A DNA stretch of 64,000 nucleotides, from NCBI GenBank assembly GCA_964035545.1, contig OZ037766.1, forward strand, positions 31,176,773 through 31,240,772. The letters are read 5' to 3'. This document shows, piece after piece, positions 6,287-63,979 of the stretch. The DNA comes from Bugula neritina. Taxonomy: Eukaryota; Animalia; Bryozoa. The notes below the pieces were generated by a model, which saw only the letters and a program-made list of their open reading frames with translations, was not told the DNA's origin and did no database searches. Made by a program: the position numbers and the translations under genes. Numbering within the stretch: position 1 is the stretch's first letter; every line of letters begins with the position of its first letter.

Positions 6287-6463
6287 CTCCTTAAGTAACT
6301 CTTGCCAGTTAAAATCTTACTCTCCAGCTACTACACTGGAAACTGGTAGGCTGGAAACAGTTAGCATCCGTTTGAATGTTACAGCTTCTTACTGCTGGCT
6401 TATAGCTACAAACTTGTTAAAGCACTTTGTTTGTTTACGGTTTACTACCCCCCCTCTCTCTCT

Positions 6464-6494
<31 letters not shown>

Positions 6495-18557: not shown

Positions 18558-18615
<58 letters not shown>

Positions 18616-21433: not shown

Positions 21434-21508
<75 letters not shown>

Positions 21509-24800: not shown

Positions 24801-27581
24801 TGATATACAATTCATGTTATTCTTTATTGCACGTCATTATGATCAAGTTCTAGATGCTATTGTATCATTTTTTTTCTAAAAGCTTGCCACATATAAGGAT
24901 TATTATGTACTTTTCTTAATATTATGTTGAATGAGTTAGTGTGCCATCCTGAAAGTGCCCTTACTCTGTATTTGAACCTCTACGGTATATGCTAGGTTTT
25001 CTTGGGAAAGTTTGCACATCCTCCCTAAATTGCTGTTAAACTTGCAGGACCACAAAACAATGAAGACCTTCAACGAACTACTCTTCTACTTCTTTGATGA
25101 ACGAACGAAGAAGTCGCAAGAGAAATTTCCAGAACACACCATGTATGACATGACAGCAACTATTATCTATGATAATTGGCATTGGAGAATTAAACAAGGT
25201 TACATGGGTGATTCCCACATACCAACCCACACTAACTTTCACTACCTCAGGAAACTACACCCTGGTGCTCAGATTGTTGGTGAGATTTGCAATCAGTAAC
25301 CGTGTATAAAATAGTAGAATATGCTGTATTTCTTTATTTTCAGTTAACTCTTAGACAGAGTATTCATATTAAGTTCGACTTTTTAATGTTCTAGCAGTAG
25401 ACTAGGCTATACAATTCTGAAAATTAGCTCTTAGAGATTCTGAAGCAGCTCCAAGCAAGTAATCAAGCAAGTTAGCATGATTTACAGTGTGGAGATTTCT
25501 TCAATCTGTGTATATATAAATGTTTTGGTAAACAGCTGTAAACTCAGATAGCATCTGGTCACTAGCCCCAAGCTCCAGTCTTGAAGGTTATTTGCCTCTA
25601 TTGATGTTTTGGGAAGTGCTAATTATAATTAAAATTTTAATAAAAAATTTCATTATAAAAGATTAAAAATTAATCAGTATACTGATTAATTTTTAATCTC
25701 TTATAATGAAATGTCTTCTCAAAAATCTTTTGGCTGTAGTTATATAAGCATGAGTGCGTTAGTAAAAATTTAATTTCATGATTACAGTTATGATGAGAAA
25801 CCCTGTGACCCGAGCTTTGTCTTTCTACAACCACGGAATAGACATGAGCAAAAATCATAACGCTAACCTTCAGTTTGTTTATAAAGACATGCCCCAGTCA
25901 CCTCTGGATATCCACAAGTTTTTTGTAGACAGGTGAATCTACTTCTATAAGTCTATTTTATCTATATCTATGTTTTCTTGAAATTAGAAGAACATAGAAA
26001 TGTAATATAATGGCTTATAATGTGCTTCTATTTTATATCTTTCAGTAGAGAGTGTTGAAATATGTTAGCTGATCTGTGTTATTTCATCTATTTAAAATTT
26101 TAAACTCCAGCAAATCCAAGCCATTCTTTGAATTAAACTCTGCATATAAACTGTCATGAATACTTTAATTATAAAATGTTTATTTTACAAAAGCACAGGT
26201 TTTATATTCTTTACAAATAAATAAAAAAACATATATATTATACTATGTTATTATACATAAAAGCAATAGAATTTGGCACTTGAAGTTAATTTGAACGATA
26301 ATGTTACTTTTATACAGCATATACCATTTCAATGAATGTGTAAAGAAGACATCTTTGAGAGCTTGTTGCCACCTATCTGGCTGGGAGTCTCAAAACTGGG
26401 GAGATCCACAATACTTTATGACTTTGAGAATTGGAATTTACTACATCTTCTTAGAGGAAGTGTATAAAAACTACCCGCCATCCCAGGTGATGCTTTGTTG
26501 TTTAATCTGCTTCCTTTGTTCTTAGAAAAAAGCAAAACCAGTCATTAGTCTTACATTACAATGCTAGGTTGGCCAGGCTATCATTGGAGCAGAGGCTAAG
26601 CATATAAACTGACTCATATGATAATCAAGGAAAAAAAATCTTAATTTAATAGCATTGATTGATAATTAGACCAGCAAATGGTTGAAATATTTATTATTGG
26701 ATTATTCCATCAAAGTTAGGTTGGCAGAAACTTTCTCAAAAACTGCAAAAACAATGCAATAATTTAATAATGATTGCATAGTTTTCTATATGAGCAAATA
26801 CTAAAATATAGTGTAGCTAAATTCAACTTTTATATTTTAATATTGAAAGCTAGCTTAATTAAAATGCTGCGTAGACCTACTAGCTGTAGATATATTTGCA
26901 TATATAGTATCAAAATATCACAACTGTTTTAACAGAATATATTCTGTATTGTGTCATCAATAATTTCGCTTACAGGTGCATTTAGTGAAATCTGAAGACT
27001 TTTATGGTTCCCCTTTGCCAACTCTGAATCAACTTTTTACTTTTCTAAATATCAGTACACAGTCCACAGAGCGTCTGATACAGCAGAAAGGAAGTATGAT
27101 ATTATATTATATTTTATTTTATTATATTATACTATGTTATATTATGTCATATTATATAATATAATATTGTATAATACTATATTATATTATATTTCATTGT
27201 ATTATATTATATTGTAATATGCTATATAATATATTGTATATAATGTAATATTATATTGCATTGTATTATCTCTTATTAAATTATATTATATTATATCAAG
27301 TTATATTATATCATATTAACGTATATTATATTGTTTTATGCCATATTATTTATATAATATATTATATTATAATATACTATATTATGTTACGTGTATATCA
27401 TTTTCAAGATGCTATAATCATGAGCATAAAGAAGTATTTCAAACCACTGATAGAGACATACAAACTGCTACAAAAGTTCTATGCACCCTTCAATGAAAGG
27501 CTAGTTTCAATGCTCGACGACCAAAAGTGGGCGGAGTGGGAGAAGGAAATTAACCGATTGACAGGGAAGGATAAATCTTAG
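21837..27581 (+). CDS. Golgi type II carbohydrate sulfotransferase, CHST15-like, copy 2 (long stem, ~620 aa)
   Basis: Exons 21837-21960, 22879-23468, 23858-24034, 24575-24709, 25048-25279, 25788-25932, 26318-26486, 26976-27093, 27409-27581. All are GT-AG and phase-consistent, with the same PAPS-binding motifs as copy 1. Confidence 0.88.
25647..25712. repeat. 66-bp loop-less palindrome (33-bp arms, 1 mismatch) in sulfotransferase copy 2 intron
   Basis: ATTTCATTATAAAAGATTAAAAATTAATCAGTA|TACTGATTAATTTTTAATCTCTTATAATGAAAT. Confidence 0.9.
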
Positions 27582-28356
27582 TAGTTATACATGTTTATTA
27601 AACAGAACATTGGTGCTAGGCAACATATGCCTCAGTTGCTTTTTGATGAGTGTTTTTAGATTTGTAATTTATCTCACAATTAAGCAATTCTGTCTTCACA
27701 CTATTTTTATGAAAGTGGAAATTACAAAAGCTGAGTTATTTTGTTTTAACTCTAAAATATAAATATATTTTTAAAATATTATGCAATATTGTAGCTGCAT
27801 AACTTTGCTAATGCCAGTAAACTGAGTTATAGGAAATAACTAGCTCAATAAGTAATTCTTTTTATTTTGAATTATTGAATTTTCAATATTTTTTTTTTAA
27901 TTTATGCAGAATTTTATTTGTGTTCATGAAATCAAGGTGAAGAGTAATAAACTGGTTATTTTGTTGATGGTAGTCTGTAATGTTAAAGGAAATAAACAAA
28001 ATAAATAGTAATCAACGAATTGTTTTAAATTATAACAAAACTTTTAATACAAAACTCTCTAAGAGCATGAATAAAATATATCAGCCCAACAAGATGCACA
28101 CCCCGAACTGGGTAACACACTTGGCTATTGACTCTCAAGTATTCTACGAAAATCTTTGTATTATATAATATATAATTCATGGCCTGGAATAAAATTATTA
28201 AAACACATAAATTGTTTCTAGTTAGACTAGTTTTATCATAATTATTTAGCATGTGGTCTTATAACTCAGTATGCTGTTGAGATACTTTAATATACTTCTA
28301 AAGAGCTCATTAGTTTATAGAGAGTTCATCTCTAAAGACTTTAGTCGCCAATGAAA

Positions 28357-34300: not shown

Positions 34301-37300
34301 TATATAGAAGAATTGATCATTTATAAACAAGGAGCAATCATATGACATGCTGTGCTAGAGATTGAAAAACATCTTTCAACTTAGAATCACTTTTGGTTTT
34401 TACTAAAAGATTACTTCAGGTGCAGTGCAGTTACAAGTACCATACTTGCAGTGCCTGCTCTAAGTGCTGACGTGACCCTGTCGTCCATCTGCTGCCGGTA
34501 CGCTGCCGTGAACATCTCCCTGTACTCTGTCCTGTTGGGTTGGTCTCTTGCATACTCCTGTAGACATCATAATGTTATAGGATGAAGTAAAACTAAACTA
34601 GTGTTTAATTCTTGTTTGCCATTACTGTCTAATTTAGCACGAAATGAATTAAGTTTGAACAAAACCTATTTATATATGTGATAATAAAACTTCAGTTTCA
34701 TTCTTCCTGGATTGTTGGTTGTGGGCATTCACATGCGGCAGCTGAGAAATTTTGATAGCCCAAAGTTTTTTATTTTTCTAGATAAATTTAACTTTGAGGC
34801 ACAGGTTCAAGTTTTTACAAGAAAATAATATCTTATGCTACATTTTGCATTCAAAACACATGCAAGTTTTTTTCCAACTTCTTCATTGCTGAACTTATAA
34901 CTATAGAAAGGACATATTATTATACCATTTAGTTAGCAGCTAGTAGTAAAAAGCATTTTGTTTAATGCAACCTTGTAAGAGTTGATAGCATTGGAATCCA
35001 ATTTTTGAATAATGAAGTAAAAACAGTTAGATACAATGAATAAGATTTTGACTTGCGATATTCCAATGCGTAGTATAAACTGACTAGATTTTGAATTGTT
35101 TATGAGGCTATTATAATTTATAATTAGGCTCAATAAAAATTCCTTCTTTACCTGCCACCATATAAAGTTAAAGACATGAAATTTAAGGCATTACCTGGTA
35201 TTTATATTTTGGTTTGTCATCTACGTAGTCTGCTAATGAGTGTTCCATTTCTTGCTTTGTTTTGTGTTTGATCCTTTTGTCAGTAGTTTTAATGTCTAAT
35301 GGACAAAACAAAGTAGTTGAAGAAAAAGGTGCTAATAATAACGTTATTATCAACTAAATTATTTTATCTGTACTACAGCTATTGTCTAATAAGTTTATGA
35401 CCCAAGTAAGTTTTAGTGTGATAATTACACAACTTTAAAATATAGTGGAAATTTTCATTAACACAAGGTCTGCAGTACTTTATAAGATGAATTAAAAGAC
35501 ATCCAAACTACTTGACTAACCTAACTATAACTTCTTCCTAATAGTATATATAAACATGGAACTTACCAGCAATGCCTAGTTCTTTATTGGTGATGTTGCT
35601 TAGGTCAGTAAGATTACCAGAAATAGTATCAGCAGTACGAGAACTGAGAAAAACCTCCTCCTTACAAAATGCACTCTCCTTTCCTTTCACAGTCGTCTTT
35701 AGAATCTTTAAAGCTCTTGAAAAGTGGAAGGAGTTGCAATTCACTTCTACAAAAGAGAGTTTATTGAATATTATTATCACTTTGAAGACAAATTTGATGG
35801 CAGAGTTGCTCAACGGGTTTATACTTAATTTTTAACTTTTAAGTGCGTGAAGTTATTATTAGTTATTAGAATTTCATGTAGCTGACTGAATGATCACAAA
35901 GTCAAGAGTAAAGTTTCACACACGTACACATGCGGGAGCATATTTATAATATAATTTAATAAAGAAATATATTATCAAAATATCTAGATTTTGGTAACAA
36001 AAGTTTAATGTTTGTAATAATTTAGGCAAGTTTAGAAAAACTTAACTTTTAAAATCTTGAGTTTAGTACTACATAAGACTTATGCCAAAAAAATTAATAT
36101 TTTGTCATGTTTATATATGATTTAAGACAGGCTAGCAAAATTATGAATTCTACTGTAATGAAAAAGACTACATTTTAAATATTTTATAAAGTTTCCAATA
36201 AAACCAAATTTGCCTTGCAGTTTCTCAACACTCTAACAAAAACAGCTAGAGGATAGCATAGTAAAGATAGCTTTCATTGTTTAACTCACCTAGTTCAAAT
36301 AATTCTGACAAGTTTTAAAAAAGGTCAAGCATAAAATAAAATATTTCAATATGAAAATATATGCAAAACTTTGGCTTCACAATAGTTTCATAATGGTACA
36401 GTGTTTGTTGTTTGGTGATTGCTACAAGATATGGCTTTCCTAATGTCTATTTTAGAAAGCCACTGAATAATTATGTAAAACAGTTTCCTCTAAACTTGTA
36501 TGGTTTATTTTTAAATATTCAGTCTGTGGGAGACAGAAAGCCAATAATAATGAATAATTATTAACAATTTCAAAATTAATATTCAAAAGTGTGCAGATGA
36601 AGTCAGGAATGCTGGAGAACACCTGCATATGTACATTTATCAATGAATATATATAATAAGATTTCCAAATTCCTGAAATGCTTAATACAACAACACAACT
36701 TTATCGAGGCCAATTTTTTTACATAGCTGCATGTTAAGTAAAAACTCTCACCCATAAATATATATAGGTTATCGGCACAGGTGGTGTTTAAAATATATGT
36801 ACCTATTAGAGGAAATTCACCCTGCTCATATATATACCTGAATATATACCTGTATATACCTGTATATACCAGTATATACCTGTATATACCTGTATATACC
36901 TTCGTATACCTGTATATACCTGTATATACCTTCGTATACCTGTATATACAGGTATATACCTTCGTATACCTGTATATACCTGTATATACCTGCAGTATAT
37001 ACCTGCAGTATATACCTGCAGTATATACCTGTATATACCTTCGTATACCTGTATATACAGATATATACCTGTATATACCTACCTGTATATACCTGTATAT
37101 ACCTGCATATACCTTATACCATATAGTGTATATTTACTACAATGTCTTCAAACAAACACATCTTTGGCTGCTAGCAGATGATTAATGTTCCAGAGCTGCC
37201 ACTGCCTATATTGACATGTATTTAACAAAGCAATGCTAAAACCTCTTCATTCTGTTTGTTACTTACTTCCATGGAGGTCATCTTTCTTGCTGAATTTACA

Positions 37301-38503
37301 CTCACAGCCCAGCTTGTCCACGTCCAACTCATCACAAATATATTTCTAAAAAGCATGAAAATATCTCAATTACTGATAAAAAGCAGCTAGCTACTAGCTA
37401 TCACAACAATTGTTATAAGCTTTGAGACTGAATTCCAGCAGTGTTTTGGCACCTAAATTATTTAAACACTTTGCCAAGATAGAACGAAGAGAGGTTGATA
37501 ATTTCCTTTCTCTATATCTCCGCTGACAGAATGCCACCAACATAGAGGCCTAAACTTTTTCCTGACTGTGCTTTCAGTGTCCGGTGCCAAAGCAAAAAGA
37601 TTTGCTGGCAATCAGATTACGTCTTAGCGAAAAACAGACTTGGCTCAGCTAGCTGCAGCTTCTACTTGATATTAGCTATGTTGGTAAAACATTCAGTCTT
37701 GTGTCATGTCAAAGCCTTTAAAGTTTAAACCATGTTGTCAGCAAGATTAGGGCATAGTAAACCCCCCCCTCCCCCACAATCTCATGCCATTAGGTTTTCC
37801 CAGCAAGTATTACAACTATATACATAAACATAAACTTCCTAGCTAATCTGATTAATTATTCTCTTTTAGTTACAAATATCATTATACATTTTAACTTATT
37901 GATTGTTAAGATATTCCAGAACAACGCTCTATCTATTTCAATATGCACACTGATGAAAAAGTATCTTTCTTGCATTTCACATTTTTACTTGTCAAAGTTT
38001 CACAAATATATATGTATTTTGTGAAACTTATTAAAATGTAGCTAGTAAATATTGTAAGATTGTCATTACTATAGCAATACATATTCAATGACTTTTTACT
38101 GTAAATTGTGTATTAAAAGCAAAGGTAATAAGTCTATTAAAATACACGTTAACAATTATGGAAGACTTTATGCCAGGACATGATTAGTATATGTGAACAC
38201 AGGCCCAGCCCGATTTCCTGGTGTAACGTTCAAACTCAGTCTTACAACTAAATTTAGTAAACTGTGTTTTCACCAATTGTCCAAAAACTAATTCCTATCT
38301 TCTAATATTATTCTTACCCAGCAAGCTATCCTGTGGGTATCGGTTGGATTCGTGTCATCTCTCTTCTCTCTCACATGATTGTATAACACTTCCAGGGTCT
38401 TATAATCTTTAAAATCAGATGAGGATGAAGTGAAATGATTGTTGTTCAGATGTAAAGATAAAAATACACCCGTAAATAGTACATAATTTACTGCAGAATA
38501 CAT
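28357..38503 (-). CDS. Secreted matrix metalloproteinase (M10A), MMP21-like architecture, ~626 aa
   Basis: 13 phase-consistent exons: 38318-38503, 37267-37345, 35567-35746, 35195-35295, 34446-34557, 33432-33698, 32429-32533, 31914-32096, 31496-31630, 30540-30653, 29948-30111, 29455-29576, 28357-28489. Hydrophobic N-terminus, furin sites REKR and RPKR, zinc motif HEVGHLLGVPHS, Met-turn SSAMY. The catalytic domain runs straight into hemopexin blades (LYGRCYGPTDAI, IDAMV..FYVFKG, VDAAL..LYLFSG, IDEAY..AFFQG) and ends KWNDLC. Confidence 0.88.
36830..37112. repeat. (TATATACCTG)n-type minisatellite in MMP intron
   Basis: Repeating TATACCTG units with TTCG/GCAG variants. Confidence 0.9.
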
Positions 38504-38664
38504 CTTTTCTCAATCTATTGATATAAATCTGCTGTAGATTAGCTTCGTCTGCACACAATTTTGTCCGTTGGAGAAACGTCGTCTGGAACTGCAATGACTG
38601 ATGCAAGAGAGGCTTTAGTATTGACTAGTAGCAGTGCAAAATTGTTTTAATCATAAATACCAGC

Positions 38665-38704
38665 GCTGATTGAATCTGATTGGTCGCCTTGTCACCACGG
38701 TAAC
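38665..38704 (-). promoter_or_regulatory. MMP promoter: CCAAT box and RFX X-box
   Basis: CTGATTGG (CCAAT on minus) at ~38676-38683 and GTCACCACGGTAAC at 38691-38704, matching GTNRCC-N2-RGYAAC, about 190 bp upstream of the ATG. Confidence 0.45.
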
Positions 38705-40088: not shown

Positions 40089-42501
40089 CTAACTTTTCTG
40101 TGATGTTTCATAAATATTTGTAGGAGATATGCTGTTCCAGAGTAACTCAGATAACAGACTGTTCTTAGCAACGTCAGCGTAAGGTAAGTCTAGGATTTGC
40201 TGTCGAGTTATTGCTGTCTGTCTGAAATATAAAATAGACAAAATTGTTGTTATAAAAAACACGGCAGCTATATTCTTTTCATGAGCATGCATAGAATTAA
40301 AATATCTTTAAAGTTATTTCAGTGTAAATTAAAAACTATATGTACTCAGCAGTTAAACTTGCGGGTAAATGAAAAATTTGAGTAGGCCTAAGACTCTGAG
40401 ATATATAAATATCTAATTTCAAATCATTTTCCTATAAACACAAGTTTAGATAGCAAACTAAACTCATTTATACATAATTAACTCTTTGTTTAAGAAATGC
40501 TTAGCATATTTTGTAAAACAGTTGGATTTTAAAAACCTGTTTTTAATTTAGTAAAACATGCAGATAAGAAATATTTACCTTTGAACTTCACTGATTATAA
40601 GAAGGAGTTGGGGCATTCTGAGTGGAAATTCCGAGTATTTCATCATAATGTATGACTGAAGCACTCTTAGCAAGTCATCCCGAAACTGTTGTATTGGATT
40701 TCGATCTTTCAAAGCATAAATTTCTTCAATAAAAAATAATACTCGTTATACCCTTAAAATGCATAGTGACATAAAATACTTTAGTTGAGCTATAGTGTTT
40801 TAATTTTTTAGCTTCATCGGTTTTCATCAAAAGTAGTCTTAATATGTGAAACTGATTGCTAAAAATTTTATAGTGATTTTATGTGAGTTGTCTGCCCAAT
40901 CTCAAGTTACCTTGGGTTGCATTTAGACTGGGCTGCAAGTACACAGGGGTTGTAAGGTCACCGTGTGTTCCAGTCTGCAGGTCATTTCGATAATTATTGC
41001 AGATGGACAAATATTAGAATTAGTGCTACAAACTTGAACTACGTAGTTAAATTCCAAGCTATAGACTATAAAGTTTGAGTGTATCAAGTATTAAGGATAT
41101 ACAGCTGAAATACAATTTAACTGCAGCTCAGTGTTGGTCACTTGATAGCACTTGTATTGGTAGAAAAGTCAGGTTGTTGAAAGTGGTTGTAGGTGGTTGG
41201 AGGATTGCCACTTATAGTTGGCAGTCTGGTAAACTGGTGTTACAACGCATTATAATCATTTTGATAACAACTGAAGGTATAGTTAACATAATAGCAATTA
41301 CTGTAACAATTAACTATACCACTAAACTAATATGTATAATATTATATTGTTTAATACGTTTTAGATTATTCATCATAAGGTAAATATCATGTAAAGGATA
41401 ATATACCTGGCAGCAACAGCGAAAGAATTTTCACGGCAACATATTCGTACTGATCAATCTTCATTTTCTTGAATGTGGAAGATATATAAATAAGTCTTCC
41501 TATATTCTAAATCAACATAAACTATAGGGATAAATAGAATAAATATTTTTATATTGATAAACATAATACTATAAATAAAACAATAAAATTACCTCAACAT
41601 GATTCATCTCCCTTGCTTTCTTCATGTCAATAGTCTTCCCATAACTCAGTCTCACAAATCCGTCTGCATCTCTCGACCTCCAAATCACACCAAAACAAAT
41701 TAACTCCGCCCATGAGTTTTGAAGTAGCAAGACTTGGTCCTCAGTCTACAAAAATTAATCACATGGGATAGTTAGATGCAGCACAGACTTCTGTACTTAG
41801 TGACCCCAGACTTTGTGCTGCATGAAGCCATTTCACATGTCTACTTTAATTATGTGAACTTTAACAAAGATGTTGTGACTTTAAATATCTTTCATTATCC
41901 TGTAGATCTGAATATGAGTAAAGCTGTGATCCAACTTACATTAAATTCAGCAAAGTGGGGCAGTCTCCTAGCCCACCATATCACCTGGTGTAGCCTATGC
42001 TCAGTGAGATGTAACAAGGAGTTAAACTTATCATCATCATCACTGGTCATTCTGTTGGCACAGCAAGGTTGGGGCGTTGTGCTGCACTCTTCATAGTATT
42101 TCTCCAAGGCTACAAGTTCCTGCAATAAGCTTCTAAGTCTAACTATATTGCTACTCAAAGAGAAAATGACATGCAGCAACCCTTGAAAGCTTTGCATGTT
42201 ATGCTTGTCTAGCTTATCAAATACACCTTCAGCATAACAAATAATAATTATACTATACTATACTTATACTATACTAAACATGTATTCTATAACGCAGCCC
42301 CCCTCCCCCCCCCCCTCTATAACATTTGTGGTCCGCCACAAGATTAGCTGACCTTGAAAATTAAACAAAGTGATTTCACTAATAGCTAAAAATACAGGTA
42401 AAACAAAAGCAGCATCTTTAAACGCAAAAATTGAGTTATTTTTAGCTATTTCACTCAATTACCTCCAGCAGCTGGTGTGAAGTCTCAAAGCTATTTGACA
42501 T
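40089..42501 (-). CDS. HR39/NR5B-derived nuclear receptor, ligand-binding domain only (NR-C, ~249 aa)
   Basis: Exons 42463-42501 (MSNSFETSHQLLE), 41940-42119, 41593-41745, 41407-41506, 40579-40723, 40089-40221. Internal exon sizes 180/153/100/145 equal those of the other two receptors. Signature WARRLPHF..EDQVLLLQNSWAE, AF-2 LLSELL. No zinc-finger exons between it and NR-B. Confidence 0.85.
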
Positions 42502-44049
42502 TTCAGGGAGTTGCCTTCTTCCTATACTATAAATGAAATGTGTCAACTGTAAGTATGTTGTTGGTGTCTTTCAATATAAGGAGTGTTGCTTAATTCCACA
42601 ATATTGATGTCTCTACTTTGTCCGCCTAGAATCAAGCCAGGTGAGTCTTGTTATGACCGTTAGTTTATTACTACTTGTTTATTTATATTATTCTACGCGT
42701 CACATTCCAATATGATCAAAATACTACATAGAAATGATTAATGTGTATATATAAAACGTGATTTTAATATGTACGATGGCATGAATTCATATACTGTTGT
42801 TCTTTATATGCAATAGCTCAGCTTAAACAAATGTAAAGTTATTTTATAAAAGCCTAAACAAGCATCTTTCAATATAATACATTTTAATAAATTGACAATC
42901 CATTAAGATTTTTTAAGCAGAAAATCTAAGTTTATAAATTTGATTATTTTAAATAAAGAAGTTTAAAGCTGAAAGTTGTAGTAATAGTACATTTTAAAGA
43001 CATGTACTTTTAGGAAAAGAAGTTGTCTTTTCATTAGGAAAAACAACTACTTCTAAATTTAAGGTTTTAATCCTAAGCTGAAAAGCTTGTGCCCACTGCC
43101 CACTTGACTTAATGCATTTAAAGTAGATTGTAAAAATGTGAACAAAATAAAACAATATAATTCAATTAGCTTGGCATCTCACAATTAGCTGACTCAAAAC
43201 TTTCCTGCATAGTCTATATGACAGCGCTATAACTAAAAATCTTCTGGAAAGGCTAATATAATTAATATTGTCACAACATGTATCAGTTATGAAAGTCAAA
43301 TAAAACTATATTATAAAATATCTAAAAAAATAATTTAACAAAATTATTAATAGCTAAATATGCAGCCCAGGAAATGATAATCTAGAGCATGCCATATTGT
43401 ATAAGATGTAGCAGTTCAAAGATTATTCAACATTTAAATTCTAAACTAACAGAAATAAATCCCTTAACTACTCTATAATAGCTCAGCTGTGACCATGTAA
43501 CTGACTGCACATATGCGTTTTAGGTACATGCGTTTACTGCCAAGTGCCAGCTTTAACTCATTTTTAATTAGATTTGTTAGCAAAACTCTGAAACAAAGAT
43601 AATATTTACACTTTTTACTAAGGAGTCAGTAATATTATTCTACTTTTGATTAAATGTTTAATTTGCTAATTATAAATTTAGCTTTCTAAAGCTTTTAAAA
43701 TAAAGATAGCTTTTTTGTAATATTGTTTAAAATGTATAAATGAAATACAAAATTAGACATACCTGTTGGAGTCTGTAGGGGAAAGTGTCAAAAAGAAATC
43801 AGATGAAAAATTTTATTTTGGCGAAAACATCACGATTATTTTCCATCAACAGCAAGATGGTATTTATAATAATCATTCACCTACCAGTTATTATATACAT
43901 TTCCCATCTCCATTGATTGTTTGCATGAATATCAAAACAGTGACGCCAGATCTGATATCTTGTAGATTCTGTGTCACACTCCACCAGCCAGACGATACGA
44001 ACCGGTTGGTGTCCGTAACATAAGGATAAAAATTGGTAGAAACCAAGGT

Positions 44050-44282
44050 TTGTTTATAAAACCATTTTGCCAAACTGAAAGTTGTGTGTGGGCACTGTGC
44101 CAAATGCACTGCCCACAGGGACTCAACTATCTGCCAATAAAAACACTTGTATAAGAATTTAGTGCTTAACTACTTGATGGTTAGCCAATAAAAATAGTTT
44201 ATGATTCACTGGCACCATATTTGGACAACGTATATATAAATTGGTGATGACAACATTGTATAGCTACAGCGTTGAGGTGAGT
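44050..44282. promoter_or_regulatory. Candidate bidirectional promoter between NR-C and NR-B
   Basis: TTTATAAA 44053-44060 (reads TATAAA on both strands), CCAAT 44134-44138 and 44185-44189, TATATAAA 44233-44240, then a plus-strand donor GAG|GTGAGT at 44277. Confidence 0.4.
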
Positions 44283-45689
44283 AAATTTAGAATTTAAGGG
44301 TTTTAGATGCTACTATTTTTGGTGTAGGTCCTAAGTTTGTTATTAATACAGACAAGTTTAGAGGAGCACTCCATGGGGATTCCCATGACAGGAATTCCAT
44401 CTGCTATCTTAAAAATATTTATTTTGAGAGTTTAATTGGCTACAGAAAGCCACTCTAAAGTTTGGGAATTGCTTTTACCTGCTGTAATTGTTTGGTTTTA
44501 ATCAAAATTATTCAAGTTGAAGAACAACAACTGTATAGGTAGCTTCAATAGTTAATTTCAGTTTGATAAGTGCAATTTGATTTGACACTGACAGTGAAAA
44601 TATCTTGATATCTATAATATCATGGAGCAACTGCAATAAAACTGAGTAGTTGTATGTTTTAAATGGATTGCACTGTAATTAATTGGCAGTTAAATGTTTC
44701 ACATCCTATGACACAAAAATAGCTTAATTTTTGCTTTAGAAAAATTGTTTCTAAAACCTGGACGCATGATGCCATGCAAATTGATAGATATTGCTTCATT
44801 TAAATCAATATTGCAAGTTGATAAATTAGCCAAAGGCTTGTTAGGTGTTTGTATTTAACCTTGTAAACAAATATAAGTATATTGTCCCTGGAAAGCAATG
44901 ACTTTGTATTTTGAAATACTTCTAACCTTGTCTATAGACTTGACTAAAGTGATATCGATCCTTTACCCACTGCCTTAAAACAATTTTTAATGTAAATAGA
45001 CTAGCTAAGTTCTAACTTACAATTTATCAGCTAGATTCTAATTTTAAAACAGAAGCAATGATTTAATTGTACTTATAGGTAGGCATTGTGTAATTAGCTA
45101 ACAGATAAACAATTAACAAACTGTCCCTGATTGTTTGAAGAATAATTATAGTCATCCTGAACCTTATTCTGCATCATATAAATATATTATTAGTCTGCAT
45201 GTTTTTGTGCAATCAAATAATCTAATACAATGTATAAACAATGACTGTCAGCATACGAAATATATTACACCAACTTTATTTTCCTTCGTGAAAATTGTTG
45301 CTTCTGTGCAACATCTTACAGTTGCGGAAATTCTAACGTTGCTGGTATTTACAAACTTAACTTCTTTTATATACATATAAAGTGAATACCAGTAAAAATA
45401 GTAATTATATCCCCAATTTTTTAAAAATAATTAGCCTGAATCTTTTTTGCAGTTTATAACATATTAAATAAAAAAGAGAAGGTAGTTTAATTATACATAG
45501 AGTTATGTCATATATTCTACTTGGCATCCCCGAAATGAAAATTCTTGCTTCCATATATTTAAGAATTGATGCAAATATTTAGCATTTTATAATATTTAGG
45601 CTGATCTTCGAATAAGCTCCTGCATGTTTAGTACATGCAAGATGTTTTATTTAACTCCAGTGACACATCAACTATTTCCTGTTGACCGT

Positions 45690-45958
45690 AATTGGCCCTT
45701 AGCCAATAGATTATTTTCCCATTCTAGCTAACTTTAATCGAGTTGTTTATTATTAGATCTCGCCCGGTGCCAAAGGAATGTTTATAGAAGCAGATGTTTG
45801 TGTTAGACACGTTGTACTAGCGAGTGATGTCATGTCACGTGACTGCTACAGGTACTATAAAACCTAGCGTCTCGCTCTTCATCACCATAACCACTACAGT
45901 AACAGAGAAGGCAGAGAGAGAGAAGCGAATTGATAGTATCATCACTAAAACTGTAAGT
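45690..45958 (+). promoter_or_regulatory. Core promoter and non-coding first exon of NR-B
   Basis: ATTGG 45691-45695 and CCAAT 45703-45707; CRE-like TGATGTCA 45825-45832; palindromic E-box GTCACGTGAC 45834-45843; TATAAAA 45856-45862; donor CT|GTAAGT at 45953; acceptor TTTTACAG ending 46118. Confidence 0.65.
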
Positions 45959-46152
45959 GTTTTACTTTACTTTATTATATAATTTATGTCATATGGAGAC
46001 TTATATTAAAGAGTGGATTAAGACAATTATCATCAGCTATTTATCTCAACTATAATGCAACAACTTAAACTATATTTTCTCATTGTATGATAATGCTTAT
46101 CAATATCAACTTTTACAGTTTCAACAAATTGGAAACAAACTCGGTTAAAGCT

Positions 46153-48647
46153 ATGTCTGCTGAAATTACCCCGCCTCAACTTTTGCAGGTTTGTCTTTTC
46201 AAATTCTCTCTAACTATAATATATAAGTATATGTGGCCGTAACTACTTTTATCTTCATCTTGCATATTTTTCAATTAATTGTCTAAGCCTAAAGTGTTGA
46301 ATCATTCTTTTTATGGTTAGAATTTTAATTAGTTGTTTCTTGGTTAATTTTTCACTAAAATTTACTTTCAGGCTGCAATTAACTTTAAATTGAAATACTA
46401 ATTTAAAATTAGGTTACTATATTTAATAACCTTTAAATAAGTTAGTTTGCAAACTTGCGATGTCAATCACGTATAATTATTCCAAAAGAGGTAGCATAAA
46501 ACAGCATTTCAAGTGTACATCATACCAGCTTATAATGTATAACTTCGACTATTGCAGGAACTTGTAGCCTTAGAGAAATACTATGAAGAGTGCAGTACAA
46601 CGCCCCAGCCTTGCTGTGCCAACAGAATGACTGAAAAGGATCAACACAAGTTCAATTCGTTGTTGCATCTTACTGAGCACAGGCTGCATCAAGTAGTGCG
46701 GTGGGCTCGGAGACTTCCCAACTTTGCTAATTTCGATGTAAGTTTACAAGTTTTTAACTAATACAAAATATTTTGACCAACTCTAAATTAATTTTGCTGC
46801 TTTTGTATTAGTAAAATATTTAGACATTTTGCATGCTATAAATTTATGCTCATATTTAGTTTCGCCAATTTCCTATAATAGATCAATGATCAAGTTTTGC
46901 TACTGAAGAACTCGTGGGCGGAGCTTATATGCTTTGGTGTAGTTTGGAGGTCAAGGGATGCAGACGGATTTGTGAGACTGAGTTACGGGAAGACTATTGA
47001 CATGAAGAAAGCAAAGGAGATGAATCACGAAGAAGTGAGTGACTCCATTTTCAACTCTTCTGTAATTAATTTATATTGTATCGCATTCTGTTAACCCAAT
47101 GTATAAATGTGATTTTTTATAAGTAAATATTTCTTGTAGAATATTGGAAGAGTCATTTACGTCTCTACAACATTCAGGAAGATGAAGGTCGATGTCTACG
47201 AGTATGTAGCTGTCAAAGTTCTCTCCACATTGCTGCCAGGTATAAGAGAATACTCTGATTGGCTGTTTTGATATCCCCGTGTGACCAAATAGTACAAATT
47301 ATGCTCTTATTAAACTTATAGTAGTGTGGATACAAGATAAAGGCTGAAAATAAGGAAAATATGCAAAATATTTAATGTTGAGAAGTTTTTTATTCATCTA
47401 AATTCTATATCCACAATATTGAATTCTATGACATGCAAAATAGTTTATTGAATCTTAAAATATAACACAAACTTATTATGACATTTGATTTTCACAGATA
47501 TAGCCGAATTGTTGGAGAGTGAAAAGATACAGAAAGTTAGAAATGACACACTCGAAGCCCTCCAGCTGTACATCAGTGAAAAGCACCCAGAATCTCCTCT
47601 AAGATTTGCTGAGTTACTATTCACCATCAGTGAAGTTCAGAGGTATATTCCAGATGTGTACTGTGTACAACTATCATCCATTTGTCTAAAACTGCTATCT
47701 GCACTGCACTGCTCACATGTTTTCAATTAAATTGCACTTGGAAACAGAAGTATTTAAACTAGGAATGCATTAGGTTAATTGCTTTACATCAGCTATTGCA
47801 ACTATAGCAAGCTTTTAGTCATAGGAATTTTTCCTGACAACTATTTCATATCAAAATACTTTGAAAGATTGTGGTTTTCGAGAGAGAGCACATTCTTCAA
47901 TATTGGTGCAACTGTTTTTTAAATATATTAACATATATCAACATATATTGCAAAACCAAAAGATATTTTAGAGTTATTTCTAGCAGTAAATAAGACATTG
48001 ACTAAACTCTAGAAATGATACAACACAGTTACTTAAAATAAGCAGGTGGTTTATAGGCTGTGTTGTATCATTTCTAAATATATAATGTTTATATTTGGTT
48101 GTTTTTCTTTCCAGGCTGACAGCTTTGACAAGACAGCAAATTCTTGAGCTGCCACCTGCAGAAGTTGCTAGGAACAGCATCCTAGCCGAGTTGCTGCAGC
48201 ATAACTGCCCCAAATCAGGTAACTATTAGTGACTGCATCCTCAGTACATCATAACAAAGTACTGTGATTTCACCTGGTTACTGGTTTCCCAGGGTATGGT
48301 CTGATTACTTTGTGTAGGAAGGTTTGAACTTTGGCTAATATGATCACCTGGACATTACCACCAAACCAAACATCCTTCCAGCCATAAACAACTTGATGTA
48401 AACAACCATAATTTATTACAAGCAACTATATACCAACAGCTGTCATCAGATATTAAAGTAAGACATAACATGTAATAAATTGTTTTCCATTACAGTACCT
48501 TTGACAGAAGAACAAGCCTTGCGAGTTATACAAACAAACTACAGAGAGTTCCACACATCTAAATCCTCACATACCAAACTCTGTAGATCCCAGTCTATTC
48601 CAGCAGACTTTTCCTCACCAACCAACCCAAACCCAATAGTGGCATAA
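46153..48647 (+). CDS. HR39/NR5B-derived nuclear receptor, ligand-binding domain only (NR-B, ~289 aa)
   Basis: Coding exons 46153-46188 (MSAEITPPQLLQ), 46558-46737, 46882-47034, 47140-47239, 47498-47642, 48115-48218, 48496-48647 (TAA). Signature WARRLPNF..NDQVLLLKNSWAE, AF-2 ILAELL. The upstream non-coding exon (~45887-45952) has no ATG and carries an in-frame TAA. Confidence 0.88.
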
Positions 48648-58113: not shown

Positions 58114-61100
58114 TTACGCGCCCCCAGGGTCATAGTTCTGAGACAAACGGCCCATGGAGAAGTCCTGAGGCATATTATCTGTGCTGCTCTGACTAATGAG
58201 AAGTCTTTGGCTGAGAAAGTCTGGACTGAGCATCTGGAGAGGGTCCTGTGGCTGGAGGTGGGGCATAGCGAGACCCTTCATGTTGTAACCTTTGAGCAGC
58301 GGCGGTGAGGTCATGGCTGCCAGCTCCTGCTGCTGCCCTTGCCACTGCATTGCTGCCTGCCGATGCAGCTCAAGGTTGTCGACATAGTGCGGAGGGAGGT
58401 GAGACGGAGAGACTAGAGGGGGACTATGATGTTGCTGCCTCAACAGCAGCTCCTCTGAAGTCTTCACAGGATAGTTGAAGGCCGAACAGGATGTGGTAGT
58501 GCGGAACTGCTTGCCTCCACTCGGGTAACTACTAGAAGGTCGTCTGTCTGCTGCAGATCGGCGGCTGGTGTCAGCCGACAGTCTCCCCGAATCTGAGTGC
58601 TTTGGAAGAAAAGAGAACTCGCTAGAAGGACGTCTACTAGGATAGGCCGACAGCGTGTCTGTAGCTGCTGCCGTGTGCCCGTCTAGACTGCGTGAATGAG
58701 AGTGAGCTGTCCTGGCTGGAGCAGAGTTCATAGACGAATAACGGGGATGTGACGAGATGTCATGAGATGAGCTCTCATCCACCGAGAGATGCCTGCTAGG
58801 GGGAGGGGCGTATCGCTGAGCACGACTGTCTTGTCTGGACAAGCCAATCGATGTCCTTGAATGTTCCGATATATCCACGTGGTCAGCATCCGACTTGTCA
58901 GGGCAGTCAGAGTGCTGCCTCTGCAGCTCAGCAGACGACAGTTTCGTTTCCTCGAGATCTTTACAGTCATTGATTTCTCCGTTCGTAGAACGCTGATGAG
59001 AGAGTCCGGAGGGAGTGGGCGAGGAGCTAGTCTGAGGTCCATTGCATGTAGCCTGTGATCTGTTAGAGTCGGGTGTGCAGGCGGTTGTAGGCGCCACTAC
59101 AGCTATTCCGTCGCTAGGGTTACGGGGATGCTGGGATAGATTGAGACGACTAGGATTGGAGGAGAAGTTGGACTGAGGTATGTTCCTCTCGTACTTGAAG
59201 TTACTGCGTATGACTGCCAGGGCCTGGTCACTGGTGAGGGTCCCACCTGCAGCAACCAACACAGAATCTTTTATACAAGAACAGATGCAATCTACAGCCT
59301 CGACTAGTTCTGCATATAGCAAGTAAAACTGCAAATAGTAGATGGTGCAATGCTTACCTGCGGGCATTGCGTTGTGTTGTAGCAGTTCCATTAGAAGACT
59401 GTTCTTGGCTATTTCTGGTGACTTGAGGTGTATGATCTGCTGTCTAGTTATAGTGGTTAATCTACAGAAAAAACAGCAAACTACTTCAACACAAAATATT
59501 ACACAAGTCAAACCCATTTGATAGAAACCGCCGTCAACATATTATATTCACATGGAAACAGCAACTGGCTTTACTGGGCGGTACTTGTATTATCACAAGT
59601 TTAATGGCCGACACAAGGATAGAATTTGAAACTACAAGCCGGATCTGGTGAACTTGTCACGAGTTGGCTAGGGCTGAAGGAGCTGTCAAAACAATCGCCT
59701 TAACACTTGTCAGAGCTGGCGGGTTTGTGACAGCTGCCTTCATTCAATCCCTACTTACAGGTAGTGGCCAGCCCAGATGGTGCTAGGCCAGTCCAGGTGG
59801 TGCTAGGCCAGCCCAGGTGGTGCTAGGCCAGCCCCGGTGGTGCTAGGCCAACTAGCAAAGTGGCATCTCACATATTATAGAAAATAAAGAAAAATAAAAC
59901 AACGTCCTACCCCATTAAGTTAGTTATCAACGTGAGGTACCAACAAACAAATGAAAAGGAAATGACATCACAAATGACATCACAACTACCCTCACCTCTG
60001 CACTTCATTCAGTCTGATGAGAAGTTCACCAAACTTGAGAGGGAACTCTGGGTAGTGAGAGGAAGTATGCGTGAGTAGAGCTTCTAGTAGGTTGTTCTGG
60101 TACTGCTGTATCTTATCCCTGTCCTGAAGACCCCGGATATCTACCAGCATGTGTGATGTATGACAGTACAATGGGCTAGGATATATTATACTATGACATA
60201 AAATCATACACCATAATATATATTAAAAGATATTATATTATAACATAAAAAAACATGCTAGGAGATGCAGGATTTCCCGAGGAAACACTGGAAAGGATTC
60301 AGTCAACAATCTCAGTTATCAAAACTTACCAGGCAGCATCAGGGACAGAACTTTCAAGGCAACATACTCGTACTGATCAACCTTGAGTCGTCTGAAGCAG
60401 GAACAGACGTACAGCATTCGGCTTATTACCTGGAATGTACAGAAAGATATGTACAGAGAGAGAGGGGGGGAGAGGGAGAGAGAAAGAGAGAGAGAGAGAG
60501 AGGGGGGAGAGAGAAAGGGAAAGAGAGAGGGGGGGAGAAAGAGAGAGAGAGGGGGGGAGAAAGAGAGAGAGAGGGGGAAGGGGGGGAGAGGGAGGGGGAG
60601 AGAAAAAGAGAGAGCAGGGGGGGGGGGGGGAGAGAGAAAGGGAAAGAGAAAGGGAAAGAGAGGGAGGGGGGAGAGATGTACAGAAATATGTACAAGGGGA
60701 GAGAGATTATATAGACTTGCAGTTACCTCCTCATGATTCATTTCCTTTGCTTTCTCCATGTCCAAGCATTTACCAAAACTGAGCCTGATGATTCCGTTGG
60801 CATCAATTGACCTCCAGATGACCCCCAGGCAGACAATCTCCGCCCACGCGTTTTGCAGCAGCAATATCTGATCCTTCCTCTACAACACAAGAAATACAAT
60901 CATACAACTATTGAAGGCATCATAAATCAGTTTAAGAAGACAACTCTAGCACTACACTGAAGACTATTACAGTTTTATTATTCAAATACAAGTATGACTG
61001 AAGCTGGTAGAGTTTTATTATGTTTTACTACAGAATAGCTGCACTGCTAACTTCTCTAAAATGTAACAAATTATTCAATTCAGTAGAGATGTGGGAGGGG

Positions 61101-63979
61101 GGTATGTGGGGGGAGAAACTTTCACTTGGGTCAGCACTATAGGGGTGCATTATGAAACATTTCAACAAATGAGTGAAAGTTGACAGTCAGGTGAGTTGTT
61201 GGGATAGCTTCACCCACAGATACTCACGTTGTTGATAGTTTGGCTTTTACAACTTCACTTCCAGTATCCTTGGCTGAAGGACACGTGGGCGCTGAGTTAT
61301 TAATGGTTACTAGGAAATATCTGATAGGCTTCAGTAGTAATGAACTTAAGGACTGAGTGTACAGGAGTGTAGAGGGGGACTGAGTGTACAGGAGTGTAGA
61401 GGGGGACTGAGTGTACAGGAGTGTAAAGAAGGGACTGAGTGTACACTACAAGGACTAGATACACCAATCAACTGAGTTGTACCAACTACAGCAATCTCTA
61501 CTAACAGAGCGAGGAGGGAGAAATATATACTACTAGAACGAGTGATGGATACAGGAAGCAACTCCTTAGCTCAGCAGCAAACACTTACATGTACGGCAGC
61601 AACGCCCACACCTTACTAATTGCCAGAGTAAGTGTCAAATAATTACACAACCATTCAATGCAAGTGTAGAATATCCTTCAAACTCCACCTGGTTTACCTG
61701 AACACTGACTACACGCAGGGAATAATGTATTACCTCTCCCTTTCCCAGCTAGATTTGTTGCCCATGGCTACCAGAATTAAAACAAAAATTCTATTTTTTT
61801 TTCTACAACTAAACCTACATAATATAATTAAAAACTATGCCAAGATACAAACAATTTCAACTTACATGACTAACAAATTCCAATGAAAAACAAAGGTCGA
61901 CGATTCCGCAGTGGAAACAGACCTTGAGAATAGAGTTGCCGAGTCTTTGATGTGAGAACTGGTGACATGTAGAAACACGAGCTACTACAAGATAGGCTGA
62001 GTGCTGGCGGAGGTGAGAGGAATAAATTCCAGCCTACACGAGGACTAAAGTGGGCGACTATAAATAACAAGCGACTTTGCACACAACTCACGTCAACGTT
62101 GAGGAAGTTGGGGAGATGCCTAGCCCACTTTACTATCTGATATAGCCTGTGTTCCGTGAGATGCAGTAGCGAGTCAAATTTATCTTTGTCTCCGGAGGTC
62201 ATTCTGTCCACACAGCACGGCTGGGGCTCCGTAGTTGTCTCCTCGTAGTATCCTTCGAGGGCATATATTTCCTGCAGCATAGACTGAGAGTATAGGGTAT
62301 AGACTGAGAGTATAGAGTATAGACTGAGAGTATAGAGTATAGACTGAGAGTACAGAGTATAGACTGAGAGCATAGAGTATGTATAGACTGAGAGTATAGA
62401 GTATAGACTGAGAGTACAGAGTATAGACTGAGAGTATAGAGTATAGACTGAGAGTATAGAGTATAGACTGAGAGTATAGAGTATAGACCGAGAGTACAGA
62501 GTATAGACTGAGAGTATAGGGTATGTATAGACTGAGAGTATAGAGTATAGACTGAGAGTATAGATTATAGACTGAGAGTATAGATTATAGACTGAGAGTG
62601 TACAGAATAAGTCTTTTACTGACAAAATTTATGAATTGATAATTTTTCAGAGCAAATAAAAATAATACGAACAGACAGACAGACTAGCCAATGGGGAGTC
62701 TGGAACAGAAAGCATGATGTAACTACAGCCTATAGCTCAGTGGTAAACTAAGACCTAGTCTGAAAATCATGAACAGGTGGGGGGAGGGGGTGCTGGCCCG
62801 CTTTACAATAACTAGTATAGAATGGTGGCTAGCAATTTAGCCTTAGAACTTCATAGCTCTAGAATTAGAGTTGCAAACCCCTGACTACTTATTGATGGAA
62901 CAGTATCTGTGGATGTTTTGTAGGCAGCATATCTGCACAGCAGCTCGCCATATGAAAGGCAGCAAATGAGTGGTAGGCGGTTATTAGCAGAGGCAGCACC
63001 TTGAGATGTACTTGACATGACCTCAAGTGATGTCCTGGGGCTAGGCTGCTGCAGTGAGCCACTTGACCAGCTAATTAAGTGGCCCAGGACAGCTAGATGC
63101 CTGGCTGACAACAGAATCTTAATCTAGCAGCAGTTTGAGGAGTTCTGAGTGTGACCAGGCCAGCTCTCTGTTGGCAGAGTATGGAAGAACTGCCTCTACA
63201 CTTGACACGGTGTAGGAGCTCCCAGACGGGGGGGGGGGAGGGGGGGGGGCTCACAGACTGGGGGGGGGGGGTTTAAAGAAACTGCTCTGGCTGGTTTCAA
63301 GGAACCAACAGACAAAACTACTCTAGACACATGCCTGGGTTCAAGACACTTTAGAGAAATTCTATTAAAAACTCTAAATAAATGAATTCAGTGAAGGCTT
63401 TATATTATGGGTGAGTTTTATTAGTATATCTAATGACAGAGAAGGTCAAACATCTCTGCACTTATGAGAAAATAATATTGACATTTGGTAGTTGTCCACC
63501 CGGCACTAGAGAGATGCACCCGAACACCGTTAGCTCCGGAGACACCCACTACTGTCTTGAAAATAAACAAAATACTGTTCAGGCTGTCATTATGACAGGA
63601 GGACACAAATCCTATCTTGCTTCGCTAATATCTATGTTTCAACACGTGTTGTCTAACCTGAACTGATATTACAAGCCGTGCTATTTGCTGTACAAATCAT
63701 AGAAAGGAAAAGACAAACAGACAAACAGAGAGACAAACAGGCAGACAAGCTATTTGACACTCACCTTAAGCAAGTCGGGTATCTGTGGTTTAGGACGAGG
63801 TAGAGGTGGTTCAGGTGAGAGTGCTGAGTAAGTCTTTGGTTTCTTCACTCCACCACCTGGAGGGTAAGGGTATGGAGGGTATTCGGAGCTCTCGCTGCTT
63901 CTCTTAAATCGACGGTGAATAAACGCTGACGCTCCCTCGTAGTTGCTGCGTCCTCCCCTAGATCGATCTTCCCTGATTC
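58114..63979 (-). CDS. Hr39: Nuclear receptor HR39/FTZ-F1 beta (NR5B)-like, 3' part: T/A-box, hinge, LBD and long C-terminal extension (NR-A); zinc fingers expected beyond window end
   Basis: Exons 63765-63979 (IREDRSRGGRSNY, HR39-type T/A-box rather than NR5A RADRMRGGRNKF), 62092-62271, 60727-60879, 60330-60429, 59996-60140, 59358-59461, 58114-59246. LBD motifs EHRLYQIVKW, RRLKVDQYEYVALKV, HYPEFPLKFGELL and AF-2 LLMELL closely resemble insect HR39. Strict orthology versus paralogy is not established. Confidence 0.85.
59766..59850. repeat. 20-bp tandem repeat (GCCCAGGTGGTGCTAGGCCA) x4
   Basis: Direct inspection. Confidence 0.85.
60455..60676. repeat. Purine-only (GA/G)n tract in NR-A intron
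   Basis: About 220 bp of almost exclusively G/A on plus, flanked by the repeat ATGTACAGAAA(G/T)ATGTACA. Confidence 0.9.
61349..61444. repeat. 28-bp tandem repeat (GGACTGAGTGTACAGGAGTGTAGAGGG) x3.5
   Basis: Direct inspection. Confidence 0.85.
62280..62598. repeat. 20-bp minisatellite (AGACTGAGAGTATAGAGTAT)n abutting an NR-A splice acceptor
   Basis: About 15 tandem units; explains the YSILSVYTL part of ORF 61870..62625. Confidence 0.95.

What the first reader, a model, noticed from the sequence alone, without database searches (positions are those of the whole stretch)
40089..48647. Head-to-head pair of intact, DNA-binding-domain-less HR39/NR5B receptors next to a T/A-box-bearing paralogue: candidate convergent NR0B-like module
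Seen: NR-B (+, ~289 aa) and NR-C (-, ~249 aa) keep the LBD exon structure of neighbouring NR-A (180/153/100/145 nt), open frames, canonical splice sites and AF-2 (ILAELL, LLSELL). In place of the 215-nt T/A-box+hinge exon that ends QIPDLLK, each has a mini coding exon with a new Met (MSAEITPPQLLQ, MSNSFETSHQLLE) ending at the same phase-0 donor. The 3.6 kb between them holds no zinc-finger exon. NR-B has a TATA promoter and an ATG-free first exon with an in-frame stop. Introns are unalignable by eye while frames stay open, which argues for selection rather than decay. Established: vertebrate NR0B receptors DAX-1 and SHP lack a DBD and repress NR5A receptors. Inference: these are independently evolved LBD-only regulators of the parent (decoys, cofactor sponges or ligand carriers). 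They also lack the basic HRRFKR/KKPK hinge clusters, so they may be cytoplasmic or imported piggy-back.
Basis: partly seen in the sequence, partly recalled or inferred. Interest (0 to 1): 0.9.

Follow-up and report, generated by a model that had tools for sequence, protein, structure and literature searches.

The report
Two DNA-binding-less HR39 receptor copies
In the moss animal Bugula neritina, two old copies of the hormone-receptor-type gene HR39 have lost the part that binds DNA, yet selection keeps the rest intact, so they probably act as regulators in the manner of the vertebrate receptors SHP and DAX-1, although neither their expression nor their activity has been shown.

Summary
The genome is from the Bugula neritina complex. 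NR-B (+, 289 aa) and NR-C (-, 249 aa) are intact genes with only a ligand-binding domain (LBD), head to head next to a full HR39 (NR-A), whose zinc fingers lie just outside the window. An independent assembly (about 84% identical) has the same layout, a zinc-finger-free 3.6-kb spacer, and both genes intact, with dN/dS 0.035 and 0.037. That excludes decay and misassembly. B and C are sisters (100/100) and group with NR-A (95/99); descent from the second full HR39 on contig 7 is rejected. The coactivator groove (H3, H4-5, H12) is conserved, while H7/H9/H10-11 are remodelled. NR-B is already in NCBI as 'Hr39' (KAF6023429.1); no paper found remarks on it. These are not NR0B members, and they have no SHP/DAX-type N-terminal LXXLL boxes. 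Best reading: trans-acting dampers of HR39 signalling (inferred, about 0.45). No RNA run was available. NR-C could instead be an alternative LBD spliced to NR-A (about 0.1).

The parts
45700..45862 (+). NR-B proximal promoter candidate: CCAAT box, TGATGTCA, CACGTG, TATAAAA (45856-45862)
   Evidence: motifs conserved in the second assembly; activity not shown
45885..45952 (+). NR-B non-coding first exon (start approximate), GT donor at 45953; in-frame TAA at 45900 in this assembly only
   Evidence: the NCBI model KAF6023429.1 runs across the same junction
46119..46188 (+). NR-B mini exon: 34 nt of UTR plus 12 codons from the Met at 46153, supplying the first half of helix 1
46558..46737 (+). 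NR-B LBD exon 1 (180 nt)
46882..47034 (+). NR-B LBD exon 2 (153 nt)
47140..47239 (+). NR-B LBD exon 3 (100 nt)
47498..47642 (+). NR-B LBD exon 4 (145 nt; H9-H10)
48115..48218 (+). NR-B exon with H11-H12 / AF-2 (ILAELL), 104 nt as in NR-A
48496..48647 (+). NR-B last exon: shortened F domain whose start matches NR-A's (LTxxQALxVI motif)
44100..44278 (+). candidate distal NR-B promoter and non-coding exon (two CCAAT boxes, TATA at 44231, GT donor at 44277)
   Evidence: conserved in the second assembly; candidate only
43761..43868 (-). candidate NR-C promoter (TATAAATA 43868-43861) and non-coding first exon, GT donor at 43762
   Evidence: conserved in the second assembly; candidate only
42463..42526 (-). 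NR-C mini exon: acceptor at about 42526, Met at 42501, 13 codons, phase-0 donor
41940..42119 (-). NR-C LBD exon 1 (180 nt); its phase-0 acceptor is also compatible with NR-A's hinge donor
41593..41745 (-). NR-C LBD exon 2 (153 nt)
41407..41506 (-). NR-C LBD exon 3 (100 nt)
40579..40723 (-). NR-C LBD exon 4 (145 nt)
40089..40221 (-). NR-C last exon with AF-2 (LLSELL) and stop
42527..46118 (.). 3.6-kb divergent spacer without DBD or hinge exons; Met-to-Met interval 3641 nt here, 3693 nt in the independent assembly
58114..63979 (-). NR-A, the parental full HR39/NR5B: T/A-box and hinge exon 63979-63765; LBD exons 62271-62092, 60879-60727, 60429-60330, 60140-59996, 59461-59358; long F-domain exon 59246-58114. 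Its DBD exons lie outside the window

Best explanation
A partial tandem duplication copied the LBD exons of HR39 gene NR-A without its DBD exons. The copy acquired, or kept as a remnant of the hinge exon, a short Met-bearing exon that completes helix 1. It then duplicated in inverted orientation to give NR-B and NR-C around a shared upstream region. Shown: both are intact, old and under strong purifying selection; NR-B folds in prediction as a complete LBD; the AF-2 coactivator groove is conserved while H7/H9/H10-11 are remodelled. Inferred: they are expressed as free LBD proteins that act in trans, most likely damping HR39 (NR-A/NR-D) target genes. They would do this by competing for the same LXXLL coregulators or ligand through the conserved groove, while the altered face docks them on a partner. 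This parallels SHP/DAX-1 in effect but uses different contacts. My probability that they are functional LBD-only genes is about 0.85; that they damp HR39 signalling in trans, about 0.45.
For: dN/dS 0.035 (41 synonymous, 6 non-synonymous) and 0.037 (36, 6) between two B. neritina lineages, P<1e-18. 8 of the 9 listed coding differences in an independent-read contig set are synonymous. Same layout in GCA_010799875.2. B+C 100/100 and A+B+C 95/99; D+B+C rejected, p-AU 0.002. AlphaFold2 model of NR-B: pLDDT 86, full helical sandwich with H12, VIA Z about 28 to agonist-form LBDs; best Atlas match FTZ-F1 beta, TM 0.86. Charge-clamp positions kept: basic residue after the WA motif in H3 and Glu in H12. 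Of sites invariant in the other bryozoan HR39 LBDs, changes in H7/H9/H10-11 versus H3/H4-5/H12 are 13/32 vs 3/32 in B (p=0.008) and 16/32 vs 2/32 in C (p=0.0002), and leave-one-out controls are flat. H7, H9 and H10-11 form the canonical LBD dimer face (PMC8092661). The mini exons of B and C share MS...QLL(Q/E), which points to one start exon older than their split.
Against: No RNA run holds the locus, so transcription, start sites and co-expression with NR-A are untested. No binding or reporter data exist. NR5A receptors act as monomers (PMC10388211), so poisoning by heterodimer formation is not a given. The helix grouping was chosen after looking at the data, and B and C share a stem branch, so the two p-values are not independent. 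The H7/H9/H10 change could be relaxation after loss of DBD contacts rather than a new surface. No conserved HR39 response element was found.
Confidence: 0.45

Rival explanations
1. Tethered co-regulator or partner of other transcription factors: the remodelled H7/H9/H10-11 face binds another receptor or factor and brings it an active AF-2 surface. The effect could be activation, and it need not involve HR39 targets.
For: The changes concentrate on the canonical dimer face while AF-2 is conserved. The residue aligned with the H10 arginine of RXR's LLLRL motif is Thr in B and Ile in C. Exon 4 is still under purifying selection.
Against: No partner identified. Relaxed constraint after DBD loss explains the same pattern.
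Confidence: 0.2
2. Ligand carrier, buffer or sensor: the proteins bind the HR39 ligand or a lipid and hold, move or sense it without acting on chromatin.
For: Complete LBD fold; NR5A LBDs bind phospholipids (PMC10388211); no basic hinge clusters.
Against: The coactivator groove is the most conserved part, which a pure carrier would not need. No HR39 ligand is known to me, and pocket occupancy was not tested.
Confidence: 0.15
3. NR-C is mainly an alternative LBD cassette of NR-A: the NR-A hinge donor (63765, phase 0) splices 21.6 kb downstream to the NR-C acceptor (42119, phase 0), giving a full receptor with a swapped LBD. Only NR-B would then be truly DBD-less.
For: Same strand, downstream position and identical exon phases. 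No AATAAA within 2.4 kb of NR-A's stop, only an ATTAAA at about 1.2 kb. NR-C's mini exon has 2 non-synonymous of 4 changes.
Against: NR-C has its own conserved acceptor, Met, donor and candidate TATA/first exon. Its sister NR-B is on the opposite strand, cannot be cis-spliced to any DBD, and shares the start-exon motif. The splice would have to skip all of NR-A's LBD and terminal exons.
Confidence: 0.1
4. True SHP/DAX-1 mechanism: the proteins insert their own LXXLL motif into the AF-2 groove of HR39 or NR5A and recruit corepressors.
For: Same domain architecture. H12 reads LxELL, which is formally an LXXLL.
Against: The N-terminus is only 12-13 residues with no NR boxes. The H12 motif is shared with NR-A and NR-D, and the only other LXXLL match lies at the end of H8. 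LXXLL-related motifs mediate NR0B repression (PMC13012086).
Confidence: 0.08
5. Pseudogenes or an assembly artefact hiding DBD exons.
For: No RNA evidence. NR-C is not called in the NCBI annotation of the other assembly.
Against: dN/dS about 0.035 with intact frames and splice sites in two assemblies at dS about 0.26; colinear spacer of nearly equal length; even DNA contig coverage with no joints.
Confidence: 0.02

Closest known systems
NR5B / HR39 (FTZ-F1 beta) of lophotrochozoans and arthropods; Watersipora subatra XP_067948394.1
   Same: The LBD nests in a 100/100 bryozoan HR39 clade; 46-58% identity to full bryozoan HR39 LBDs; same LBD intron positions as NR-A and NR-D.
   Different: No A/B region, zinc fingers, T/A box or hinge; H7/H9/H10-11 remodelled; F domain shortened (B) or lost (C).
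NR0B (vertebrate DAX-1 and SHP; oyster CgNR0B; Platynereis nr0b1/2)
   Same: LBD without a zinc-finger DBD; plausible trans-regulator of NR5-type receptors.
   Different: Separate ancestry: NR0B is an old bilaterian lineage that exists beside hr39 in Platynereis and oyster (PMC13012086, PMC4070562). B and C are young HR39 derivatives with no N-terminal LXXLL boxes.
Lineage-specific LBD-only receptor genes, e.g. three in Lymnaea stagnalis derived from NR1D, NR1H and NR2F (PMC11589774)
   Same: LBD-only genes arising from ordinary receptor subfamilies; formally NR0, a non-monophyletic grouping.
   Different: In the passages read, those are annotation-level calls with no selection test, and none is from NR5B. 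Here there is a head-to-head pair with measured purifying selection.
DBD-deficient isoforms such as Drosophila E75B and E78B (from my own knowledge; a paper search found no held text)
   Same: The LBD is made without a working DBD and modulates another receptor in trans.
   Different: Those are alternative-promoter isoforms of one gene; here they are separate duplicated genes.
KAF6023429.1 'Hr39' [Bugula neritina], GCA_010799875.2
   Same: It is NR-B: six amino-acid differences over 289 residues, same exons, PF00104 only.
   Different: The model adds 54 N-terminal residues that read through the TATA box and are frameshifted in this assembly, so they are probably an annotation artefact.

Membership tests
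NR5B/HR39 (by descent) | LBD groups with HR39 sequences | tested here: met
   bryozoan HR39 clade 100/100, A+B+C 95/99 (the tree held only HR39-type rows); all named profile-search hits are HR39/FTZ-F1 beta or unnamed HR39-like proteins; Atlas best match FTZ-F1 beta
NR5B/HR39 (canonical receptor) | C4 zinc-finger DBD followed by the T/A (FTZ-F1-type) box | tested here: not met
   absent from B, C and 36-58 kb in both assemblies; present in NR-A and NR-D
NR5B/HR39 (canonical receptor) | Helical-sandwich LBD with intact H12/AF-2 | tested here: met
   NR-B model; NR-C by alignment only
NR0 (formal grouping) | Lacks one of the two conserved domains, whatever its ancestry (PMC4070562) | tested here: met
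   genomic anatomy; transcript structure not available
NR0B (DAX-1/SHP) | LBD orthologous to DAX-1/SHP/CgNR0B | tested here: not met
   B and C nest beside NR-A inside bryozoan HR39; no NR0B sequence was available by reference, so this is exclusion by nesting, not a tree with NR0B in it
NR0B (DAX-1/SHP) | LXXLL-type NR boxes in an N-terminal region | tested here: not met
   N-terminus of 12-13 aa; LXXLL matches only at the end of H8 and in the shared H12
NR0B (DAX-1/SHP) | Binds and represses NR5 and other receptors | not testable with these tools
   needs binding and reporter assays
Expressed protein-coding gene | Spliced transcripts starting at the mini exons | tested here: inconclusive
   no RNA run found; the only holder behaves as genomic DNA; indirect support from dN/dS

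The most novel reading that the evidence does not exclude
Bugula has independently evolved an NR0B-like brake on its own NR5 pathway: a divergently transcribed pair of HR39-derived LBD-only proteins that kept the coactivator groove, rebuilt the dimer face into a new interaction surface, and repress HR39-dependent transcription. This would be a young, datable replay of how SHP/DAX-1-type repressors can arise, with parent and derivatives side by side.
Probability: 0.3. Interest if true: 0.78.

Novelty: new variant of a known kind. Interest (0 to 1): 0.56.

Why it matters
DBD-less receptors are known (NR0B, scattered LBD-only genes), but NR0B is too old for its parent to be studied beside it, and invertebrate LBD-only calls are often fragments or pseudogenes; a Pacific oyster case turned out to be a sequencing error (PMC4070562). 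Here the parent, two derivatives and a sister-lineage orthologue pair are all available, selection is measured, and the pattern of change (AF-2 kept, dimer face altered) gives specific predictions. It makes testable what a receptor LBD is kept for once it cannot bind DNA. It also shows that bryozoans expanded HR39, usually a single gene, to four copies. Bugula neritina is a much-used model for larval settlement and metamorphosis, where an HR39 modulator could matter (inference).

Tried and rejected
RNA evidence: the look-up of sequencing runs gave one run; laid on 41401-47400 it behaved as genomic DNA, with even depth, allele-like variants and no splice joints. Feedback through an HR39 element: TCAAGGTCA at 42349-42357 is at chance level (2 found, 1.4 expected) and mutated in the second assembly, so it was rejected. 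Descent from the contig-7 HR39 was rejected by AU test. The 54-aa N-terminal extension of the NCBI model was rejected as coding. Weak Pfam 'spider toxin' hits on exon 1 (E 0.05) come from a Cys-Cys motif and are chance. LBD-only orthologues in other bryozoans: none found among proteins of 189-600 aa, where only Watersipora's full HR39 appeared; the word-based search is insensitive and few bryozoans are annotated. A third HR39 exon in another bryozoan (L019/L020) could not be assigned. PDB searches return RXR/ERR/ER/LRH-1 at about 22% identity and do not separate subfamilies. Paper searches found no description of these genes. As the operators asked, the spliced models were searched exon by exon by reference and the joined search was left out; joined models were used only inside local scripts, full-length steps used the database protein P0046, and NR-C was therefore not folded. 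Two neighbour-annotation calls failed on frame errors and were not repeated.
Full report
Observation. The exon models were rebuilt from the sequence. NR-B (+) has a 12-codon mini exon at 46153-46188, four LBD exons of 180, 153, 100 and 145 nt, a 104-nt H11-H12 exon and a last exon at 48496-48647, for 289 aa. NR-C (-) has a 13-codon mini exon at 42501-42463, the same four exons and a last exon ending at 40089, for 249 aa. All introns are GT-AG, with the same phases as NR-A (63979-58114, -). B and C are 171/242 identical in protein; each is 54-59% identical to NR-A. The exons give weak PF00104 matches one by one; the database version of NR-B matches PF00104 at E 2.7e-21 and has no zinc-finger match.

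No hidden DBD. A Cys-pattern scan of the window, a genome-wide PF00105 scan and a sensitive tblastn with three HR39 DBDs and the NR-A hinge exon, with contig 7 as positive control, found nothing in 36-58 kb. NR-A's own DBD lies 2.8 kb beyond the window end. NR-B has no + strand zinc-finger exon anywhere near it on the contig. The genome holds four HR39-type LBDs: A, B, C and a second full receptor, NR-D, on contig 7. NR-D is the orthologue of Watersipora XP_067948394.1 (DBD 90% identical).

Organism and independent assembly. A profile search returned KAF6023429.1, 'Hr39' of Bugula neritina, which is NR-B. Its contig in GCA_010799875.2 (L018) is colinear with window 36-57.7 kb at about 78-86% identity, so it is a sister lineage within the B. 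neritina complex (inference from the divergence). Both genes are intact there, with the same exon sizes and canonical splice sites, and the interval between the two starts is 3693 nt against 3641 nt. Contigs of one public run cover 41401-47400 evenly without joints; this run may be the source sample. A gap or misjoin is therefore excluded.

Selection. Between the two lineages NR-B has 41 synonymous and 6 non-synonymous changes (dS 0.25, dN/dS 0.035) and NR-C has 36 and 6 (dS 0.28, dN/dS 0.037); neutral expectation is rejected at P below 1e-18. Every LBD exon, and NR-B's last exon, shows the bias. Eight of nine listed coding differences in the run's contigs are synonymous. B versus C synonymous sites are near saturation (pS 0.66), so the pair is several times older than the lineage split.

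Origin. In maximum-likelihood trees the bryozoan HR39 LBDs form a 100/100 clade and B+C is 100/100. With the one-exon row and distant rows left out, A+B+C has 95/99 under LG+G4, and grouping B+C with NR-D is rejected (p-AU 0.002 and 0.004); under the mixture model with all rows this node was unresolved. Independent characters agree: A, B and C share a shortened H11-H12 loop, and B keeps A's 104-nt exon and F-domain start. The mini exons share MS...QLL(Q/E), which suggests one DBD loss before an inverted duplication. Their nucleotide identity to the end of A's hinge exon is only 12/36, so whether they are remnants or recruits is open. Candidate promoters are conserved between lineages: CCAAT, TGATGTCA, CACGTG and TATA for B, a second B candidate at 44.1-44.3 kb, and a TATA plus donor for C at 43.8 kb. 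None is shown to be active.

Structure and mechanism. The NR-B model is a complete LBD (pLDDT 86) that superposes on agonist-form RXR and ER LBDs at Z about 28 through H12; the mini exon supplies the start of helix 1. The charge-clamp positions are kept in B and C. Among sites invariant in the four other bryozoan HR39 LBDs with a full-length alignment (one of them, L011, of unknown DBD status), B changed 13/32 in H7/H9/H10-11 against 3/32 in H3/H4-5/H12, and C 16/32 against 2/32; the same test on each of the four references shows no bias. H7, H9 and H10-11 are the canonical dimer face (PMC8092661). The grouping was post hoc and B and C share a stem, so this is one suggestive result, not two. 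A kept coactivator groove on a protein that cannot reach DNA fits cofactor competition or tethered action; which of these, and on which partner, is inference. NR5A receptors work as monomers (PMC10388211). The SHP/DAX route through LXXLL boxes (PMC13012086) lacks its motif here. At 33 and 29 kDa the proteins need no import signal (general knowledge), so the cytoplasmic suggestion is unsupported.

Main open rival. NR-C lies on NR-A's strand, downstream, with matching phases, so NR-A's DBD and hinge could be spliced to NR-C's LBD. NR-C's own conserved start exon, and the fact that its sister NR-B cannot do this, argue against it, but only RNA can decide, and none was available.

Comparison and novelty. 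By descent these are NR5B; by architecture they fall in the formal, non-monophyletic NR0 group; they are not NR0B, an older lineage that coexists with hr39 in Platynereis and oyster. LBD-only genes from other subfamilies are reported in Lymnaea. No paper found describes DBD-less HR39 genes or these loci; the library lacks most subscription papers. No LBD-only orthologue turned up in other bryozoans, although a second bryozoan has three HR39 LBD exon-1 copies, one of which shares two residues with B/C and shows no hinge exon in 970 nt upstream. Verdict: a real, selected, apparently undescribed variant of a known kind, with the mechanism untested. Interest 0.56.

Limits set by the operators. Spliced models were searched exon by exon by reference; the joined database search and a fold of joined NR-C were left out. 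Joined models were used only in local scripts.

Noticed in passing
window 498-13465 vs 15772-27609: A diverged tandem segmental duplication of about 12-13 kb (80-87% nucleotide identity in the long blocks), including paired ORFs at 9033-9335 and 22869-23480.
   Followed up: no
G000:C7:5861000-5867900 (L007): A second full HR39 (NR-D) with DBD and T/A box, orthologous to Watersipora XP_067948394.1; HR39 is duplicated in these bryozoans, and the duplication appears older than the Bugula/Watersipora split.
   Followed up: yes
L011, L015, L019, L020: Metagenome contigs of another, unidentified bryozoan carry three distinct HR39 LBD exon-1 copies; L019/L020 shares T15 and N22 of exon 1 with B/C but could not be placed.
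   Followed up: partly
window 58114-59246 (-): NR-A has a very long (about 375 aa) low-complexity F domain; only its first 20 or so residues are conserved, in NR-B and in L011.
   Followed up: partly
window about 36000-38700 (-) and further left: A matrix metalloprotease (PF00413) gene neighbours NR-C in the NCBI annotation of the other assembly; useful as a synteny marker.
   Followed up: no
window 41714: A contig of run X1 carries G>A here, changing NR-C Ser84 to Leu in H4-5; the only non-synonymous one of nine listed coding differences.
   Followed up: partly
window 45829-46152: The NCBI model KAF6023429.1 reads 54 extra N-terminal residues through the TATA box; frameshifted in this assembly, so likely an annotation error.
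   Followed up: yes
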